A stretch of 63,946 nt of DNA, filler included, from Octopus bimaculoides (taxonomy: Eukaryota), in assembly GCF_001194135.2 (NCBI RefSeq). It is 7 parts of 6 records of this genome, joined end to end, with 100 filler letters (N's around TTAATTAATTAA, not from the genome) between each part and the next. Parts side by side here need not be neighbours in the genome. Positions count along the whole stretch, not along the records: positions 27,587 to 36,185 come from NC_069005.1; 6 more parts are not named here. The stretch is one strand, 5' to 3'. A program made the position numbers and the translations under genes. This document shows, one piece after another, positions 27,771 to 36,185 of this stretch. Positions within the stretch are counted from its first letter, which is position 1, and every line of letters begins with the position of its first letter. The notes under the pieces were generated by a model, which was not told the DNA's origin, did no database searches, and saw nothing but the letters and a program-made list of their open reading frames with translations.

Positions 27771-28520
27771 ACTTACTTTTAATCTGCATGTTTGTTACAA
27801 TCACTTGCCGAGACACACCCAGCATCCTAGGGTGAGTGAAAAATAAGAGATGTTACAATAAGACTGAAAGCTTGGGGAGGGGAAGCGGCAGGGGTAGTAG
27901 CAAAATGTCTTCATGCAATACAACACAGACATTTAAAATGATAGGGTTTTTCTAAGGATGTGGCCAGTACTTGTCAGCACAATCTTTTGAATTTCTCTGA
28001 GACATAGTTCTCCTGGGATTTTATCTAGATGTTTCTGACATCCCTTTTATTTTTATCATACCTAGAGCGTCTATTATACAATAACAGGAACAGTTCTTGT
28101 TTTAAGATGCTGCATGTCTTGTATTTCAATTTCCAGGTCCTTATATTTACTTAATTTGTCAAATTCCTTTACAGATATATTTTTATCAGTGGGAAAACTT
28201 ACATCTATTAATCTACAAGTATTTTCTTCCCTGTTTTCAATAATTATGTCTGGTCGAATAGCCGGGATCGTTCTGTCGGTGTTGACAGAAAAATCCCAGA
28301 GGATAGTGACATTTTTACCTTCAACAACTGGCTCAGGATGATGTTGATAACAATAAGCAGGAGTGCTGATTTTGTAGTGTTTACATATTTTCCAATGTGG
28401 TAGGGCCGTCAGCCAAGACCTGTTTTAGGGCATCTGTGACTAGTGAGGAAGTTGTCCTCTGATTGGGTTCTGGGTCTGAATACTTGTAACAGAGTCTGTT
28501 CAAGGGCCAGGTGGGGAAAA
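27745..28520 (-). mobile_element. Dong/R4 retrotransposon 3' fragment (RLE domain)
   Basis: Minus strand: VVEGKNVTILWDFSVNTDRTIPAIRPDIIIENREENTCRLIDVSFPTDKNISVKEFDKLSKYKDLEIEIQDMQHLKTRTVPV..ALGMIK...EIQKIVLTSTGHILRKTL*. The 3' UTR ends in (TAA)n. Confidence 0.88.
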
Positions 28521-28974: not shown

Positions 28975-29148
28975 ATATGTATATGTGTGTGTGTGTGTGT
29001 GTGTGTGCGTATAGAATTGTGTGTGCATGTGTGTGGATGGGTGTGTGTATATGAGTGCATGCATGTATGTGTGTGTATGTGTGTGTATGTGTGTGTGTGT
29101 GTGTGTGTGCATATAGGTGTGTGTGTGTATGCTTGCATGTGTGTTTGT
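28975..29148. repeat. Degenerate (TG)n microsatellite upstream of the first visible MMP exon
   Basis: Direct reading. Confidence 0.85.
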
Positions 29149-29189
29149 GGAGAAATTATATATTTTTAATTCTCTTCTTACTTTTTCAG

Positions 29190-29421
29190 GTTTGGAGCAA
29201 TATAACATTTCTACAGTTTACGTGGAAGCCAAGGGATATTGTAGACATCAACATCCGGTTCCTGTCTGGTAACCATGGTGATGGGATGCCATTTGATGGG
29301 CCAGATGGAATCACAGCTCATGCTTTCTTCCCAAACAGCAACAACGATGACTTTGATGGAGACATTCATTTTGATGCTGATGAAAACTGGGTGCTGAGTA
29401 ATAAAGCTGACCAAAAATCAG
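29190..29421 (+). CDS. Matrix metalloproteinase (M10A) exon: N-terminal/central catalytic domain with structural Zn and Ca sites
   Basis: Acceptor ctttttcag|GTT, donor TCAG|gtattt. Translates VWSNITFLQF...NHGDGMPFDGPDGITAHAFFP...DGDIHFDADENW, matching the MMP HGD..PFDG...AHAF.P...GD.HFD.DE.W signature. Phase 0 in, phase 1 out. Confidence 0.95.
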
Positions 29422-29491: not shown

Positions 29492-29680
29492 GCAGGTGTG
29501 GTTGTGTGGTTAAGAAATTTGCTCCCTAACTACATGGTTACAGGTTCAGCCCCAATGTGTGACCCCGTGGGCAAGTATCTTCTACTATAGCCTTGCGCCA
29601 ACCAAAGCCTTGTGAGTGGAGTTTGAGAATGGAAACTGAAAGAAGCCCATCATGTATATATGCCTGTATGTGTGTTTGTG
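29492..29680 (+). mobile_element. SINE family A, 5' part (intronic)
   Basis: gcaggtgtggttgtgtggttaagaa...ggttcagccc...ttctactatagcc...caaagccttgtgagtgga...ggaaactgaaagaagccc. Confidence 0.75.
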
Positions 29681-30079: not shown

Positions 30080-30640
30080 ACACACATTCTTGTGAAGCAA
30101 GAATCCATTAAAGAAGTCACCAATTTCACCTACTTGGGCAGTGTTATCATTACAGAAGTGGGTATAGGGTAGATGTCAACTCTAGAATTGGGCATGCAAC
30201 AGCAGTGTTCAGAGGAATAATCAAGATTTGGGCCAGCACTTTGATTAGGAACTGTATGAAGATCCTGCTGTACCAGAGCATTGTCTTGCCAACAACAATC
30301 TATGCAAGAGAAACTTTTGAAATGACTACCAAGATTATTCAGAGGATGAATGTCTACATGGAATACTCAAGATCACTCACCGAGACAAAATCACAATCTC
30401 TGAAGTCTTGAGAAGTGCAAATCTGTGCAGCCTGCAGGAGATTGAGGTCAAAAGAAGAGCGAGACTTGCAGTTTCTGTTTTCTGACTGCCAGAAGGATGA
30501 ATACCCAAGACAGCTATCTATACAACCACCAGAGGGACAAAGTAAAAGAGAGAAACCCAAAAAGACATGCTATGTATGGTATACAACTTTCAAATAAGAT
30601 CTAAAGCAACTTAACATGACCTGGGAAGCTCAAGCTGCGA
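30080..30640 (+). mobile_element. RTE-like LINE RT C-terminal fragment (intronic)
   Basis: VKQESIKEVTNFTYLGSVI...VNSRIGHATAVFRGIIKIWAS...KILLYQSIVLPTTIYARETFEMT. Confidence 0.8.
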
Positions 30641-30870: not shown

Positions 30871-31410
30871 AGAGGTAATATTTATACCCCCTTAAATTCA
30901 GATGTTCTTTTAGAACAAACTATACTGTGGTAGATACTATGAGAGAAACTCTCATATTGGCCTTTTGATGCAAAACACACTCTTGTTTATGTTGCTAGTG
31001 GAGTGATCTGGATCCACCAAGACCAGTGCTGAGATATCAGATCACATGATTTCGATTTTCGTTAGTCTAATCAATGAGGATGTTTGACTGCTAGAGATAG
31101 CAGCGACTCACCTCCCTGACAGTGATATATAGAATAACAGTGCCAGAACAAGTGCTGGTGTCGTTATTAGCCAGTGAGCTTGTTAAAAAGTATACTAGCA
31201 ACATGGGCAGTATTAATACCAAGAGGTAATATTTATCCCCACTTAAATGTGGATGTTCTGTTAGAACAAACTATTCTGTGATAGATGCCATGAGAGAAGC
31301 TCTCATATTGGCTTTTGGTGAATAATGCACTCTTGTTTATATCACTAGCAGACAGATAAATCCATGCCATCTCCAGTGCCAAGACCATCAGATCATGTGA
31401 TTTTGAATTT
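30871..31410. repeat. Diverged direct duplication, about 190-bp unit, period 351 bp
   Basis: agaggtaatatttat...ttagaacaaactat...gagagaa.ctctcatattggc...cactcttgtttat...atcagatca at 30871 and at 31222. Confidence 0.8.

Positions 31411-31535: not shown

Positions 31536-31612
<77 letters not shown>
31517..31612. repeat. (TG)n microsatellite
   Basis: Direct reading. Confidence 0.95.
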
Positions 31613-31870: not shown

Positions 31871-31942
31871 GGTTTCGTGGAGTAGTGGTCATCATATCTG
31901 CTTTACATGCAGAAGTCTACAAGTTTGAACCTTGCCAGAACC
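31871..31942 (+). tRNA. tRNA-Val(TAC)-like gene or pseudogene (intronic)
   Basis: GGTTTCG...GAGTAGTGGTCATCATATCTGC-TTTACAT-GCAGAAGTCTACAAG-TTTGAAC-CTTG..CAGAACC. The anticodon arm is perfect (TAC at 31904-31906). The T-loop reads TTT instead of TTC and the acceptor stem has a mismatch. A T-run follows. Confidence 0.6.
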
Positions 31943-32009
31943 TACTTTATTTTTGAGGGTTGCAGGTTGAAGTCCCTCTGCAGGCGTATATTTGTTTTAT
32001 TTTAAAGAT

Positions 32010-32181
32010 GCAGGCGTGGCTGTGTGGTAAGAAGCTTGCTGTCTAACCACATGGCTTAGGGTTCAGTCCCACTGTGTGGTACCTTGGGCAACTGTCTTCT
32101 ACTATAACCTTGGGCTGACCAAATCCTTGTGAGAGGATTTAGTAGATGGAAACTGAAAGAAGCCATCGTATGTGTGTGTGC

Positions 32182-32237
<56 letters not shown>

Positions 32238-32608: not shown

Positions 32609-32767
32609 GTCAGATCAGTCTACTGTGTCAAGCAATCCACCAAATTGGTCACTCATTAGGATTATTCCACTCTGAGAGCACTTCAGCACAAATGTGGCCA
32701 TACATCATGGAATGTAATGGCACTTCAGTGCATGCTGATGACATTCAAGCATTACAGTCACTCTACA
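32609..32767 (+). CDS. MMP exon carrying the catalytic-zinc motif (HQIGHSLGLFH, Glu to Gln) and Met-turn
   Basis: Acceptor tttaaaag|GT, donor TACA|gtaagt; in phase with the previous exon (G+GT=Gly). Translates GQISLLCQAIHQIGHSLGLFHSESTSAQMWPYIMECNGTSVHADDIQALQSLY. Not in the ORF track because it is short. Confidence 0.93.
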
Positions 32768-32808: not shown

Positions 32809-33327
32809 CTCTGCTGTGTTGGACATAAGTTATAACAGCCTATCTCGTTGGTGTTAAATATCTGATGACTTGTTTCATGAAGATAAAATTTTATGAGAAA
32901 CATTTCCCTTTAAACTTCATTTGAGGAGGAATGGAAAACACTCTGTAGTGTATTTATTGGTAACAATAATCTGATAAGCGATAGATACAGAGTTTAAGTC
33001 CCATTAGAAGAACTGCTGCTTTTTTCTGTTTCAATTTGGTGTTTTTAAAATTCTAATAATATTTGCAATAAACTCTCTGCTATGTTGGACATGAGTAATA
33101 ACATCCTGTCTTGTTGGTGTTAAATAGCTGATGACTTGTTTCATGGAGATAAAATTTTATCAGAAACGTTTCCATAAAAATTAATTTGAGAAGAAGTGAA
33201 AAACACTCTCTAGTGGCAATAATTATATTTGATAAACAATAGATACAGGGTTTATGTCCCCTTAGAAGACCTGCTGCATTTTTTGTTCCAATTTGGTGTT
33301 AAACTTTTTATAATGTTTACAATAAAT
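32809..33327. repeat. Tandem duplication (period 266 bp) filling most of the MMP intron
   Basis: ctctgct.tgttggacat...gttggtgttaaata.ctgatgacttgtttcatg.agataaaattttat...aaaacactct.tagtg...tagaaga.ctgctgc...aatttggtgtt...caataaa occurs at 32809 and at 33075. Confidence 0.9.
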
Positions 33328-33377: not shown

Positions 33378-33734
33378 GTCCATCTGAGGGCATCCAAACT
33401 GCAGTTTCTAGTAATATGTCAACCAGCAAGGATGAGAACTTTGAAGACGATCATTCAGGGTCACAGGGTTCAAGTTCTACGACAGTCAGCAGCTCCCACT
33501 TGACCAGCCCATCAATGTCAGCTGGAGATAGATTCTGGTGGACACACAGCCAAGACACACAGACAGAACGACAAACCTATCCATATTGGTACCGTTTCTC
33601 CAGACTGGGGCCATCAACAACCTCACCATCGGCCTTACTGACATCAGCTCAAACTACAGTTAGGCCAAAGTACTGTGATGGCAGATTGGATGCTATCACT
33701 GTTGCAACAGATCACCTGACCTATGGATTTAGAG
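33378..33734 (+). CDS. MMP exon: Ser/Thr-rich linker and start of hemopexin repeat 1
   Basis: Acceptor tcaacag|GT; in phase with the previous exon (A+GT=Ser) and with ORF 33416. Ends ...PKYCDGRLDAITVATDHLTYGFR(G)|gttgga, matching the hemopexin C-x3-DA...Y/F-FKG start at a phase-1 intron position typical of MMPs. Confidence 0.88.
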
Positions 33735-34367: not shown

Positions 34368-34391
<24 letters not shown>

Positions 34392-34414
<23 letters not shown>

Positions 34415-34591: not shown

Positions 34592-35612
34592 NNNNNNNNN
34601 NNNNNNNNNNNNNNNNNNNNNNNNNNNNNNNNNNNNNNNNNNNNNNNNNNNNNNNNNNNNNNNNNNNNNNNNNNNNNNNNNNNNNNNNNNNNNNNNNNNN
34701 NNNNNNNNNNNNNNNNNNNNNNNNNNNNNNNNNNNNNNNNNNNNNNNNNNNNNNNNNNNNNNNNNNNNNNNNNNNNNNNNNNNNNNNNNNNNNNNNNNNN
34801 NNNNNNNNNNNNNNNNNNNNNNNNNNNNNNNNNNNNNNNNNNNNNNNNNNNNNNNNNNNNNNNNNNNNNNNNNNNNNNNNNNNNNNNNNNNNNNNNNNNN
34901 NNNNNNNNNNNNNNNNNNNNNNNNNNNNNNNNNNNNNNNNNNNNNNNNNNNNNNNNNNNNNNNNNNNNNNNNNNNNNNNNNNNNNNNNNNNNNNNNNNNN
35001 NNNNNNNNNNNNNNNNNNNNNNNNNNNNNNNNNNNNNNNNNNNNNNNNNNNNNNNNNNNNNNNNNNNNNNNNNNNNNNNNNNNNNNNNNNNNNNNNNNNN
35101 NNNNNNNNNNNNNNNNNNNNNNNNNNNNNNNNNNNNNNNNNNNNNNNNNNNNNNNNNNNNNNNNNNNNNNNNNNNNNNNNNNNNNNNNNNNNNNNNNNNN
35201 NNNNNNNNNNNNNNNNNNNNNNNNNNNNNNNNNNNNNNNNNNNNNNNNNNNNNNNNNNNNNNNNNNNNNNNNNNNNNNNNNNNNNNNNNNNNNNNNNNNN
35301 NNNNNNNNNNNNNNNNNNNNNNNNNNNNNNNNNNNNNNNNNNNNNNNNNNNNNNNNNNNNNNNNNNNNNNNNNNNNNNNNNNNNNNNNNNNNNNNNNNNN
35401 NNNNNNNNNNNNNNNNNNNNNNNNNNNNNNNNNNNNNNNNNNNNNNNNNNNNNNNNNNNNNNNNNNNNNNNNNNNNNNNNNNGATACCAAGCTGAAGTGA
35501 TGCATTTTGAGAAGATATGAATAATAACAATAAATGGAGCAAAACGCATATAAATGTAACATCTTAGCTCATAAGTTACCTCATCATTTCGCATTTGTCT
35601 TGCTTTTATATG

Positions 35613-35705: not shown

Positions 35706-35834
35706 AGGAACTTTTATTTATATGCGTTTTGCTCCATTTATTGTTATTACACCTTCATTGCTTCAATAATATTGGTTTCAAAGTCTAACAGTTTTTTCAC
35801 TCTTATTATCTTTTATATATATATATATATATTC

Positions 35835-36185
35835 ATGAGTACAGCAATGAATTCCAGGTAGAGGTAGGGGTCCACCAAGGTTCCGTCCTCAGCCCCCTCT
35901 TATTTATCATAGTCCTCCAAGCAATCACAGAGGAGTTCAAGACAGGTTGCCCCTGGGAGCTCCTCTATGCTGATGACCTTGCCCTAATTGCGGAGTCACT
36001 ATCAGAACTAGAGGAGAAGTTTCAGGTGTGGAAGCAAGGTCTAGAATTGAAGGGCCTTAGAGTCAACCTAGCTAAAACCAAAATCCTAATAAGTAGGAAG
36101 GTAGATAAAACACAAACCCCTTCAGGTAGATGGCACTGCTCAGTATGTAGAAAAGGAGTAGGTAGTAACTCTATAAGATGTACCC
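35835..36185 (+). mobile_element. RTE LINE reverse transcriptase fragment
   Basis: VGVHQGSVLSPLLFIIVLQAITEEFKTGCPWELLYADDLALIAES...KGLRVNLAKTK...CSVCRKGVGSNSIRCT. Confidence 0.92.

What the first reader, a model, noticed from the sequence alone, without database searches (positions are those of the whole stretch)
32638..32670. MMP with the catalytic glutamate replaced by glutamine (HQIGHSLGLFH): candidate pseudo-protease
Seen: the codon after the first zinc His is CAA (32641-32643, Gln). All three catalytic-zinc His, the Gly, the Met-turn (AQMWP), the structural-zinc ligands (HGD, AHA, DIH) and the Ca loop (FDGPDG) are kept. The three exons splice in phase with no stop over 249 codons. Known: in matrixins the HExxHxxGxxH Glu is the general base, and E-to-Q is a standard inactivating mutation. 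A-to-I editing, extensive in coleoids, cannot convert CAA to a Glu codon. Inference: this is a maintained, catalytically dead or very weak MMP-fold protein, possibly a substrate or TIMP trap, scaffold or matrix-binding decoy, rather than a pseudogene.
Basis: partly seen in the sequence, partly recalled or inferred. Interest (0 to 1): 0.85.

Follow-up and report, generated by a model that had tools for sequence, protein, structure and literature searches.

The report
Conserved octopus MMP lacking catalytic glutamate
This octopus matrix-metalloproteinase gene has glutamine in place of its catalytic glutamate, a change kept under strong selection in at least six related lineages, so it is probably a natural non-cleaving or barely cleaving MMP, a type not yet described for this enzyme family.

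Summary
Window 32638-32670 encodes HQIGHSLGLFH, and CAA (Gln) at 32641-32643 sits where matrixins have the catalytic Glu. The piece is 100% identical to CM046625.1.

The Gln is not an assembly error, a rare allele or pseudogene decay:
- O. sinensis, O. vulgaris, Argonauta hians and two unidentified, more distant lineages all encode the same 11 residues. One of these is a spliced transcript and the other a genomic contig.
- The DNA under the motif differs at synonymous sites. The Gln codon itself is CAA or CAG.
- dN/dS for the catalytic domain is 0.06-0.08.
- All zinc and calcium ligands, the Met-turn, the cysteine switch and a furin site are kept.
- The hemopexin domain is more conserved than the catalytic domain. 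This is the reverse of the gastropod relatives, which keep HE.

Best reading: a secreted, zinc-binding MMP homologue without its general base, working mainly by binding. Loss of activity is inferred from engineered E-to-Q MMPs, ADAM7 and ACE3; it was not measured. The ligand and the tissue of expression are unknown. It is a new variant of a known kind and of moderate interest.

The parts
29190..29421 (+). Exon 5 of 10. It encodes the middle of the catalytic domain (VWSNITF...ADQKS + 1 base).
   Evidence: AG/GT boundaries. Identical to the exon obtained by mapping XP_014775865.1 onto CM046625.1. Within the Pfam Peptidase_M10 match.
29274..29384 (+). Block of structural-zinc and calcium ligands: HGD, FDGPDG, AHA, GDIHFDADE.
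   Evidence: Coordinates. These residues are invariant or conservatively kept in all HQ lineages and in active MMPs.
32609..32767 (+). Exon 6 of 10. It encodes the active-site helix, the Met-turn, the S1' loop and the last helix of the catalytic domain.
   Evidence: The orthologous exon was found in O. sinensis, O. vulgaris, Argonauta and ENA contig L006.
32638..32670 (+). Zinc-binding motif HQIGHSLGLFH. The three zinc His and the Gly are kept; the general-base Glu is replaced by Gln.
   Evidence: The amino-acid sequence is identical in six lineages while the DNA differs at synonymous sites. The best PDB sequence match is the engineered MMP-12 chain that carries HQIGHSLGL.
32641..32643 (+). 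CAA, the Gln codon at the catalytic-Glu position. It corresponds to CM046625.1:20524704-20524706.
   Evidence: The record coordinate is derived. The codon is CAA in three Octopus species and in L001, and CAG in Argonauta and L006.
32686..32700 (+). Met-turn AQMWP. The Met codon is 32692-32694.
   Evidence: Met is kept in the octopods and in L006; it is Leu in the L001 transcripts.
32626..32628 (+). First Cys of a subfamily-specific Cys pair (LLC, four residues before the first zinc His).
   Evidence: The C...H[EQ]..H..G..H...C signature occurs only in the HQ clade and its HE gastropod relatives among 283 fetched MMPs. A disulfide between the two Cys is inferred, not shown.
32713..32724 (+). 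Second Cys of the pair (32713-32715), followed by an N-x-T sequon (NGT in octopods, NKT in the distant lineages) in the S1' loop region.
   Evidence: Glycosylation of the sequon is inferred only.
33378..33734 (+). Exon 7 of 10. It encodes the Ser/Thr-rich linker and the first strand of the hemopexin domain.
   Evidence: AlphaFold2 predicts the linker as disordered, with pLDDT below 50.
33527..33604 (+). Aromatic linker motifs specific to the HQ clade: DRFWW (33527-33541) and YPYWYRFSR (33578-33604).
   Evidence: Conserved in Octopus, Argonauta, L001 (DKYWW ... WPYWYRISR) and L006; absent from the gastropod relatives.
33674..33733 (+). Start of the hemopexin domain (CDGRLDAITVATDHLTYGFR), including the first Cys of the domain-closing Cys pair.
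   Evidence: Pfam Hemopexin matches the full-length protein. The model shows a confident beta-propeller over residues about 463-661.

Best explanation
**What it is.**
- The window holds exons 5-7 of a 10-exon Octopus bimaculoides gene annotated 'collagenase 3'.
- The gene encodes a 689-aa secreted pre-pro-matrixin. In order, it has a signal peptide, a propeptide with a cysteine switch (KRCGVPD) and a furin site (RRKRR|F), a catalytic domain, a Ser/Thr-rich linker, a four-blade hemopexin domain and a short acidic tail.
- Every metal ligand of the catalytic domain is kept. The general-base Glu of HExxHxxGxxH is Gln.

**When the change arose.** It arose after this lineage split from gastropods, whose relatives keep HE. 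It has since been held by purifying selection in octopods and in two more distant, probably decapodiform, lineages.

**Proposed mechanism (inferred).**
- The protein folds, binds zinc and calcium, and is secreted and furin-processed like an MMP.
- It cannot efficiently deprotonate the zinc-bound water, so it holds ligands in its cleft rather than cutting them, or cuts them orders of magnitude more slowly.
- Its main work is protein binding through the exceptionally conserved hemopexin domain and linker.

**Shown:** the sequence, the gene model, the conservation, the selection and the fold prediction.

**Inferred:** loss of activity, secretion and processing, and a binding function.
For: **Sequence and gene model**
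- The motif and the Gln codon are read directly from the sequence.
- The piece is 100% identical to O. bimaculoides CM046625.1, and its exons equal exons 5-7 of XP_014775865.1.
- Pfam finds Peptidase_M10 at E = 5.3e-46, plus Hemopexin and the PG_binding_1 propeptide domain, in the full-length protein.
- In the AlphaFold2 model the pro, catalytic and hemopexin domains mostly have pLDDT 80-98. The best Foldseek matches are proMMP-1, proMMP-2 and proMMP-9.

**Conservation of HQ**
- HQIGHSLGLFH is present in O. sinensis, O. vulgaris, Argonauta hians, the Logan transcript L001 and the ENA contig L006.
- The DNA under the motif differs at synonymous sites, and the Gln codon is CAA or CAG.

**Selection**
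- Catalytic-domain dN/dS is 0.080 (O. bimaculoides vs O. sinensis) and 0.064 (vs O. vulgaris). Hemopexin dN/dS is 0.021-0.026.
- Between O. bimaculoides and Argonauta, the catalytic domain has 39 nonsynonymous against 83 synonymous differences.
- Binomial tests against neutrality give P = 7e-5 to 1e-87.
- The octopus protein keeps 65 of 98 positions that are at least 85% conserved in 69 other MMPs. Its HE gastropod relatives keep 58 and 54, so the domain is not decayed.
- Catalytic vs hemopexin identity is 82 vs 96% (Octopus-Argonauta) and 50 vs 82% (Octopus-L001). In HE gastropods the order is reversed: 72 vs 63% and 45 vs 36%.

**Ancestral state**
- Haliotis, Lottia and Patella proteins share the Cys-pair signature and have HE.

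**Effect of E-to-Q**
- The top PDB sequence match is an MMP-12 chain carrying HQIGHSLGL.
- A proMMP-2 E404Q mutant is in the PDB.
- ADAM7 (HQLGHNLGMQHD) is listed as a pseudopeptidase in PMC11266112.
- ACE3 has HQxxH. That paper reports that the same mutation abolished activity in endopeptidase-24.15 and, as unpublished data it mentions, in ACE (PMC1925091).
Against: - No activity, metal content, secretion, processing or ligand was measured.
- From my own recollection of the matrilysin mutagenesis literature (not retrieved here), E-to-Q MMPs keep a small residual activity, roughly 0.1-1% of kcat/Km. 'Dead' may therefore really mean 'slow'.
- All three zinc His and the Gln itself are perfectly conserved. 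This suggests the zinc site is still used, which fits both a ligand trap and a slow or specialised hydrolase.
- No expression evidence for the octopus gene itself was obtained. Transcript evidence exists only for the unidentified L001 lineage.
- The two distant lineages are not identified to species.
- The catalytic-versus-hemopexin contrast rests on a few pairwise comparisons, not on a codon-model test over a tree.
Confidence: 0.72

Rival explanations
1. It is still a working protease. Either the residual activity of an HQ site is enough for a slow or very specific cleavage, or another group or a post-translational change (for example Gln deamidation to Glu) supplies the general base.
For: - All zinc and calcium ligands, the Met-turn, the cysteine switch and the furin site are kept, so the whole zymogen and activation apparatus is intact.
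- The active-site helix is the best-conserved part of the catalytic domain: 11 of 11 residues are identical while the domain overall is 50% identical.
- From my memory of the literature, E-to-Q matrilysin is impaired but not fully inactive.
Against: - Glu occupies this position in 326 of the 343 motif matches among the 283 fetched MMP-type proteins.
- E-to-Q is the standard inactivating mutation used to trap substrates.
- ADAM7 and ACE3, which have the same change, are treated as inactive.
- No clade-specific acidic residue that could replace the Glu was evident in the alignment.
- The hemopexin domain is more constrained than the catalytic domain, unlike in the HE relatives.
Confidence: 0.2
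2. The Gln is an artefact or a sign of decay: an assembly or sequencing error, a rare allele, or a recently inactivated pseudogene.
For: Nothing beyond the prior expectation that a catalytic-residue change in a single genome could be an error. The piece does contain an assembly gap (34592-35482), but that gap lies in an intron.
Against: - The same Gln is present in four independent genome assemblies, one ENA contig and five Logan transcript variants.
- The Gln codon shows a synonymous CAA/CAG difference between lineages.
- The 10-exon ORFs are intact.
- dN/dS is far below 1.
Confidence: 0.01
3. The codon is recoded at the RNA level. Coleoid A-to-I editing would turn CAA into CGA or CGG, so the protein would carry Arg (HR) rather than Gln in some tissues.
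For: Coleoids recode many transcripts (general knowledge). The middle A of CAA could in principle be edited.
Against: - Editing cannot create a Glu codon, so it would not restore activity.
- The five assembled transcript variants of the L001 lineage all read Gln. The codon is CAA in the L001 contig, the only one of the five whose DNA was fetched.
- No octopus RNA data were available to test this.
Confidence: 0.04

Closest known systems
Canonical matrixins (MEROPS M10A), especially secreted furin-activated MMPs with a hemopexin domain (MMP-11 / MMP-28 type)
   Same: - The domain order is the same: propeptide with a cysteine switch and an RxKR furin site, catalytic domain, linker, hemopexin domain.
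- The three catalytic-zinc His, the Gly, the Met-turn and the structural zinc and calcium ligands are all present.
- The predicted fold matches.
   Different: - The general-base Glu is Gln.
- There is an extra Cys pair flanking the active-site helix.
- The linker carries clade-specific aromatic motifs.
- The hemopexin domain is more conserved than the catalytic domain.
- No specific orthology to any one human MMP: MMP-12, -8, -13, -9, -16 and -11 all score about equally. The database name 'collagenase 3' is therefore arbitrary.
Gastropod relatives with HE: Haliotis XP_067667989.1, Lottia XP_009053959.1, Patella 'stromelysin-3' P0163, and P0017
   Same: - They share the subfamily Cys-pair signature.
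- The start of the hemopexin domain is similar (C..DG[KR][LI]D).
- Lottia and Patella have a similar C-terminal tail.
- All have a furin-type site.
   Different: - They keep Glu (HEIGH or HEFGH).
- They lack the WW / YPYWYR linker motifs.
- Their catalytic domain is more conserved than their hemopexin domain.
ADAM7 (M12B), a pseudopeptidase with HQLGHNLGMQHD
   Same: It is a metzincin with all three zinc His and the Met-turn kept, in which only the general-base Glu is replaced by Gln. It is regarded as non-catalytic and as acting through protein interactions (PMC11266112).
   Different: It belongs to a different family (an adamalysin, membrane-anchored, with disintegrin and Cys-rich domains). 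It is vertebrate and has a role in sperm maturation. It is only distantly related to matrixins.
ACE3 (M2) of mouse, rat, cow and dog, with HQMGH
   Same: It is a natural, expressed HExxH-to-HQxxH homologue that is predicted to be inactive (PMC1925091).
   Different: It is a gluzincin rather than a metzincin. It carries several other active-site substitutions, and it is a pseudogene in humans.
Engineered E-to-Q MMPs (an MMP-12 chain with HQIGHSLGL, such as 5i2z; proMMP-2 E404Q, 1eak)
   Same: They carry the same substitution at the same position. The MMP-12 mutant shares HQIGHSLGL residue for residue.
   Different: They are laboratory mutants made to stop catalysis. The octopus protein is a natural, selected version.
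Onthophagus taurus 'matrilysin-like / 50 kDa hatching enzyme-like' protein (XP_022906005.1, HQIGHNLGLIH)
   Same: It is another natural matrixin with E-to-Q and all three His kept.
   Different: It is an independent event in a beetle. It lacks the Cys pair, and its conservation in other species was not examined.

Membership tests
Matrixin / MMP (Pfam PF00413, MEROPS M10A) | Significant match to the matrixin catalytic-domain profile | tested here: met
   - The window product matches PF00413 at E = 8.9e-36.
- The full-length protein matches at E = 5.3e-46 over profile positions 1-158 of 159.
- PDB MMP catalytic domains match at E about 1e-24.
Matrixin / MMP (Pfam PF00413, MEROPS M10A) | HExxHxxGxxH: three zinc-binding His and the Gly | tested here: met
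   In HQIGHSLGLFH, the His at motif positions 1, 5 and 11 and the Gly at position 8 are present.
Matrixin / MMP (Pfam PF00413, MEROPS M10A) | Catalytic general-base Glu after the first zinc His | tested here: not met
   - The residue is Gln (CAA, 32641-32643).
- It is Gln in all six lineages.
- Glu occupies this position in 326 of the 343 motif matches among the 283 fetched proteins.
Matrixin / MMP (Pfam PF00413, MEROPS M10A) | Met-turn below the catalytic zinc | tested here: met
   - AQMWP at 32686-32700.
- Met is kept in the octopods and in L006; it is Leu in the L001 transcripts.
Matrixin / MMP (Pfam PF00413, MEROPS M10A) | Structural-zinc ligands (His, Asp, His, His) and calcium-site residues | tested here: met
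   HGD, FDGPDG, AHA and GDIHFDADE align with the ligand positions of MMP-12 and other MMPs. This is met by alignment only; metal binding was not measured.
Matrixin / MMP (Pfam PF00413, MEROPS M10A) | Propeptide cysteine switch (PRCGxPD) | tested here: met
   KRCGVPD is present in the full-length Octopus proteins, KRCGVTD in Argonauta and SRCGVPD in L001. It lies outside the window piece.
Matrixin / MMP (Pfam PF00413, MEROPS M10A) | C-terminal hemopexin domain closed by a Cys-Cys pair | tested here: met
   - Pfam Hemopexin matches at E = 7.7e-14.
- The two Cys are invariant in the alignment.
- The model shows a confident beta-propeller.
- Only the first strand lies in the window (33674-33733).
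Matrixin / MMP (Pfam PF00413, MEROPS M10A) | Zinc-dependent endopeptidase activity | not testable with these tools
   This needs recombinant protein and an activity assay.
Pseudopeptidase (inactive metallopeptidase homologue) | Clear homology to an active peptidase family together with loss of a residue essential for catalysis | tested here: met
   The substitution is the same type as in ADAM7 and ACE3.
Pseudopeptidase (inactive metallopeptidase homologue) | Maintained by purifying selection (not a pseudogene) | tested here: met
   - dN/dS is 0.05-0.10.
- Neutrality is rejected.
- The ORFs are intact in four genomes.
- The Gln codon varies synonymously.
Pseudopeptidase (inactive metallopeptidase homologue) | Experimentally shown lack of catalysis | not testable with these tools
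   This rests only on inference from E-to-Q mutants and natural analogues.
Vertebrate collagenase 3 (MMP-13), the database name | Specific orthology to MMP-13 | tested here: not met
   - MMP-12, -8, -13, -9, -16 and -11 all match with near-equal scores.
- The closest relatives are mollusc proteins carrying automatic names borrowed from several different MMPs (MMP-14-like, MMP-9-like, stromelysin-3).
- MMP-13 has no furin site and no Cys pair (general knowledge).

The most novel reading that the evidence does not exclude
The HQ site is not merely dead but repurposed. The zinc-binding helix, including an invariant Gln, has been frozen across lineages whose catalytic domains are only 50% identical. 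The protein may therefore use an intact zinc cleft as a non-cleaving, high-affinity ligand-capture site that works together with its hyper-conserved hemopexin domain. It would be a natural 'substrate-trap' MMP, and the first ancient pseudo-enzyme lineage within the matrixins. It would offer a natural model for the non-proteolytic functions of MMPs.
Probability: 0.3. Interest if true: 0.7.

Novelty: new variant of a known kind. Interest (0 to 1): 0.5.

Why it matters
- **A gap in the pseudo-enzyme literature.** Non-proteolytic functions of MMPs are usually studied with engineered E-to-A or E-to-Q mutants, and I know of no human MMP that is a natural pseudo-enzyme. A 2024 review of metallopeptidase pseudo-enzymes lists no M10 member.
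- **A natural experiment.** An MMP that lost only its general base, kept every metal ligand and its activation machinery, and has been held under strong selection shows what an MMP fold can do without cutting.
- **An annotation error.** The current database name, 'collagenase 3', implies an activity the protein probably lacks.
- **Why the interest is only moderate.** Pseudo-enzymes are common in enzyme families generally, the same change is known in ADAM7 and ACE3, and nothing is yet known about this protein's ligand, tissue or phenotype.

Tried and rejected
- **First homologue search.** The 249-aa window product found only two distant hits and missed the 99-100% identical octopus proteins. 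The word index is lossy. The exhaustive representative search and a profile search were needed.
- **Hemopexin-profile search.** It again missed the known orthologues. It did return P0281, an exon-8 ORF, which led to the genomic contig L006.
- **Upstream exons in the piece.** tblastn with two MMPs found none. The piece starts inside intron 4.
- **Species of L001 (SRR24189505) and L006 (ERZ21867824).** Literature searches for these accessions found nothing. 'Probably decapodiform' is my inference from relative divergence and from the shared linker and tail motifs.
- **Prior reports of this protein.** Searches for its accessions found nothing in the searchable main texts. The cephalopod and MMP papers I looked at do not mention an HQ MMP. 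A squid haemocyte 'MMP/vitronectin' hemopexin protein (PMC3349304) could not be linked to this gene.
- **Kinetics of E-to-Q MMP mutants.** The search was unproductive, so the residual-activity figure rests on my memory.
- **JGI metagenome scan for DNA encoding HQIGHSLGLFHS.** It gave one hit. That hit is an unrelated protein with HQIGHWFGLFHTF in an ORF with no resemblance to this gene, not an orthologue.
- **Pseudogene or assembly error.** Rejected on the comparative data.
- **RNA editing restoring Glu.** Rejected on codon logic.
- **A decayed catalytic domain.** Rejected. The octopus protein keeps more canonical positions (65 of 98) than its HE gastropod relatives.
- **Non-coding RNAs.** Rfam found no family in the piece. 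ARAGORN found one tRNA-Val-like element.

Full report
**1. The observation**

- The + strand at 32638-32670 reads CAC CAA ATT GGT CAC TCA TTA GGA TTA TTC CAC, which is HQIGHSLGLFH. CAA (Gln) at 32641-32643 occupies the position of the matrixin catalytic Glu.
  - HGD at 29274-29282
  - FDGPDG at 29292-29309
  - AHA at 29316-29324
  - DIHFDADE at 29361-29384
  - Met-turn AQMWP at 32686-32700
- The three exons are 29190-29421, 32609-32767 and 33378-33734. All have AG/GT boundaries and join in phase into 748 nt, or 249 codons, with no stop.
- The product matches Pfam Peptidase_M10 at E = 8.9e-36 over profile positions 33-158 of 159.
- Its best PDB sequence match is an MMP-12 chain that carries the identical string HQIGHSLGL (5i2z group).

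**2. What the locus is**

- The piece is 100% identical to Octopus bimaculoides GCA_001194135.2, chromosome record CM046625.1. Window coordinate = L002 coordinate minus 1934.
- I mapped the annotated protein XP_014775865.1 ('collagenase 3', 689 aa) back onto the genome. This gives a 10-exon gene spanning 35 kb.
- No upstream exon lies in the piece.
- The full-length protein contains:
  - a hydrophobic N-terminal signal-like segment;
  - a low-complexity stretch;
  - a propeptide (Pfam PG_binding_1) with the cysteine switch KRCGVPD and a furin-type site RRKRR|F;
  - the catalytic domain (Peptidase_M10, E = 5.3e-46);
  - a Ser/Thr-rich linker;
  - a hemopexin domain closed by a Cys pair;
  - a short hydrophilic tail, with no membrane anchor evident.
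- An AlphaFold2 model of the O. sinensis orthologue (99% identical over the window's 249 residues) gives mostly confident pro, catalytic and hemopexin domains (block pLDDT about 80-98). The linker and part of the metal-binding loop region (residues 263-284) fall below 50. Foldseek finds proMMP-1, proMMP-2 and proMMP-9 as the best structural matches.

**3. Is the Gln real and maintained?**

The orthologues found were:
- O. sinensis XP_029650943.1
- O. vulgaris CAI9740650.1
- Argonauta hians GAB1608138.1
- a cluster of five near-identical 627-642-aa proteins from Logan assemblies, one of them on L001, a 2.9-kb contig whose ORF is uninterrupted and which is therefore a spliced transcript
- an ENA genomic contig (L006) that carries exons 5-9 of a related species

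Evidence that the Gln is maintained:
- All orthologues encode exactly HQIGHSLGLFH.
- The underlying DNA differs at many synonymous sites. The Gln codon is CAA in the three Octopus species and L001, and CAG in Argonauta and L006.
- Nei-Gojobori estimates among Octopus species give catalytic-domain dN/dS of 0.080 and 0.064, hemopexin 0.021-0.026, and whole gene about 0.09-0.10.
- Between O. bimaculoides and Argonauta, synonymous sites are saturated. The catalytic domain has only 39 nonsynonymous against 83 synonymous differences.
- Binomial tests against neutral expectation give P from 7e-5 (catalytic domain, closest pair) down to 1e-87 (mature protein, Octopus-Argonauta).

Assembly error, rare allele and pseudogene are therefore excluded.

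**4. Ancestral state and rarity**

- A Cys pair flanks the active-site helix (C...H[EQ]..H..G..H...C). Among 283 fetched MMP-type proteins it marks a small subfamily: the HQ proteins plus gastropod proteins from Haliotis, Lottia and Patella, and P0017. All of the gastropod proteins have HE.
- Gln is therefore derived. It arose after the split from gastropods and before the octopod lineage separated from the L001/L006 lineage.
- Across the same set, the catalytic position is Glu in 326 of the 343 motif matches.
- Gln occurs only in this orthogroup and, independently, in a beetle protein (Onthophagus taurus XP_022906005.1, HQIGHNLGLIH).

**5. Pattern of constraint**

- The catalytic domain is not decayed. 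Of 98 catalytic positions that are at least 85% conserved in 69 other MMPs, the octopus protein keeps 65. Its HE gastropod relatives keep 58 and 54.
- The metal-binding segments and the active-site helix are the best-conserved parts of the domain.
- The usual order of domain conservation is nevertheless reversed:

| Pair | Catalytic identity | Hemopexin identity |
|---|---|---|
| Octopus - Argonauta (HQ) | 82% | 96% |
| Octopus - L001 (HQ) | 50% | 82% |
| Lottia - Patella (HE) | 72% | 63% |
| Haliotis - Lottia (HE) | 45% | 36% |

- The HQ clade also has conserved aromatic motifs in the linker that the gastropod proteins lack. These are DRFWW at 33527-33541 and YPYWYRFSR at 33578-33604.
- The weight of selection therefore lies on the hemopexin domain and linker, with the zinc site preserved as well.

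**6. How it most likely works**

- In matrixins the Glu polarises the zinc-bound water and shuttles the proton to the leaving group. This is established knowledge.
- E-to-Q keeps zinc and substrate binding but removes the base. That is why it is used to obtain uncleaved complexes and stable zymogens: an MMP-12 chain with HQIGHSLGL and proMMP-2 E404Q.
- Natural metalloprotease homologues with the same change are regarded as inactive:
  - ADAM7, HQLGHNLGMQHD (PMC11266112).
  - ACE3, HQMGH. That paper reports that the equivalent mutation abolished activity in endopeptidase-24.15, and mentions the same for ACE as unpublished data (PMC1925091).
- I therefore propose that the protein is secreted, furin-processed and metal-loaded like an MMP, but binds rather than cleaves. 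The hemopexin domain and linker would provide the main interaction surface, and the intact cleft possibly acts as a trap.
- These steps are inferred, not shown.
- From memory, E-to-Q matrilysin retains a fraction of a percent of activity. A slow-protease reading therefore stays open, at about 0.2.
- The TIMP-trap idea is possible but has no support here. Cephalopods have at most one canonical TIMP gene according to PMC10755359.

**7. Comparison with what is known, and novelty**

- By profile, fold, metal ligands, Met-turn, cysteine switch and hemopexin domain, the protein is a matrixin. It fails the one defining catalytic feature, the Glu.
- It is best described as a natural M10A non-peptidase homologue, analogous to ADAM7 in M12B.
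- It is not specifically related to vertebrate MMP-13, so the database name is misleading.
- The 2024 review of metallopeptidase pseudo-enzymes lists no M10 member.
- I found no paper mentioning this protein or an HQ cephalopod MMP.
- I rate it a new variant of a known kind, of moderate interest.

**8. Limits**

- No activity, expression or ligand data were obtained for the octopus gene.
- The species behind L001 and L006 are unknown, so 'coleoid-wide' is likely but unproven.
- The selection analysis is pairwise.
- Disulfide formation and glycosylation are inferred.

Noticed in passing
window 29511-29647 and 32028-32164: Two copies (80% identical over 137 nt) of a short interspersed element. 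One lies about 90 nt downstream of exon 5 and the other in intron 5. The sequence (GCAGGCGTGGCTGTGTGGTAAGAAGCTTGC...GGTTCAGTCCCACTG) looks like a tRNA-derived SINE of the kind abundant in octopus genomes; that identification is from memory.
   Followed up: partly
window 31871-31943 (+): ARAGORN calls a tRNA-Val(TAC) here, in intron 5, just after an (AGG)8.7 repeat. Rfam's tRNA model does not reach its threshold, so it is probably a degenerate tRNA-derived element rather than a working gene.
   Followed up: partly
window 35789-36184 (+): An open frame in intron 7 matches the Pfam reverse-transcriptase family RVT_1 (E = 9e-15) and runs off the end of the piece. An 86% identical copy lies in the 10 kb flank upstream of the gene (L002 2485-2797). 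Other retroelement-like open frames at 28077-28424 (-) and 30112-30594 (+) gave no Pfam match.
   Followed up: partly
window 28984-29149; 31537-31612; 32197-32237; 34370-34410: Several long dinucleotide repeats sit in the introns. An impure (TG)n tract ends about 40 nt upstream of the exon 5 acceptor. There is also a perfect (TG)38, a (TA)20 and an (AT)20.
   Followed up: no
window 34592-35482: An assembly gap of 891 N lies inside intron 7. It does not touch coding sequence.
   Followed up: yes
L001 (P0004 cluster) versus L006 exon 6: The Met-turn Met is replaced by Leu in all five Logan transcript variants (AYLWPF). It is Met in the related ENA contig (AYMWPF) and in all octopods. This is a second departure from the metzincin consensus in one lineage.
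   Followed up: partly
P0154, P0155 versus P0004 (Logan transcript cluster): Transcript variants of the distant orthologue end differently after the last hemopexin Cys (...GCTDRKSVV or ...GCTKVPDRKSVV, versus the long acidic tail ...PHIRQPFENDEEWDLELNK). This suggests alternative 3' exons that drop the conserved tail.
   Followed up: no
P0103 / P0284 (Onthophagus taurus XP_022906005.1, XP_071057017.1): A dung-beetle MMP-family protein independently has HQIGHNLGLIH with all three zinc His kept. Whether this is conserved in other beetles was not checked.
   Followed up: no
L007 737-771 (-), JGI contig Ga0302325_10673010: A metagenome ORF encodes LVHQIGHWFGLFHTF, an HQxxH zinc-motif variant in a sequence unrelated to this gene. 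It was found only because it fits the degenerate DNA pattern.
   Followed up: no
window 30871-31007 / 31222-31357 and 32809-32914 / 33075-33180: Two pairs of nearby direct repeats (74-88% identical; start-to-start spacing 350-351 and 266 nt) lie in introns 5 and 6. They look like local duplications or adjacent copies of one element.
   Followed up: no
L005 22949-23591 (-), O. vulgaris locus: The nearest called gene downstream of the O. vulgaris orthologue is a trypsin-domain gene on the opposite strand. Whether this neighbour is shared in the other species was not examined.
   Followed up: no
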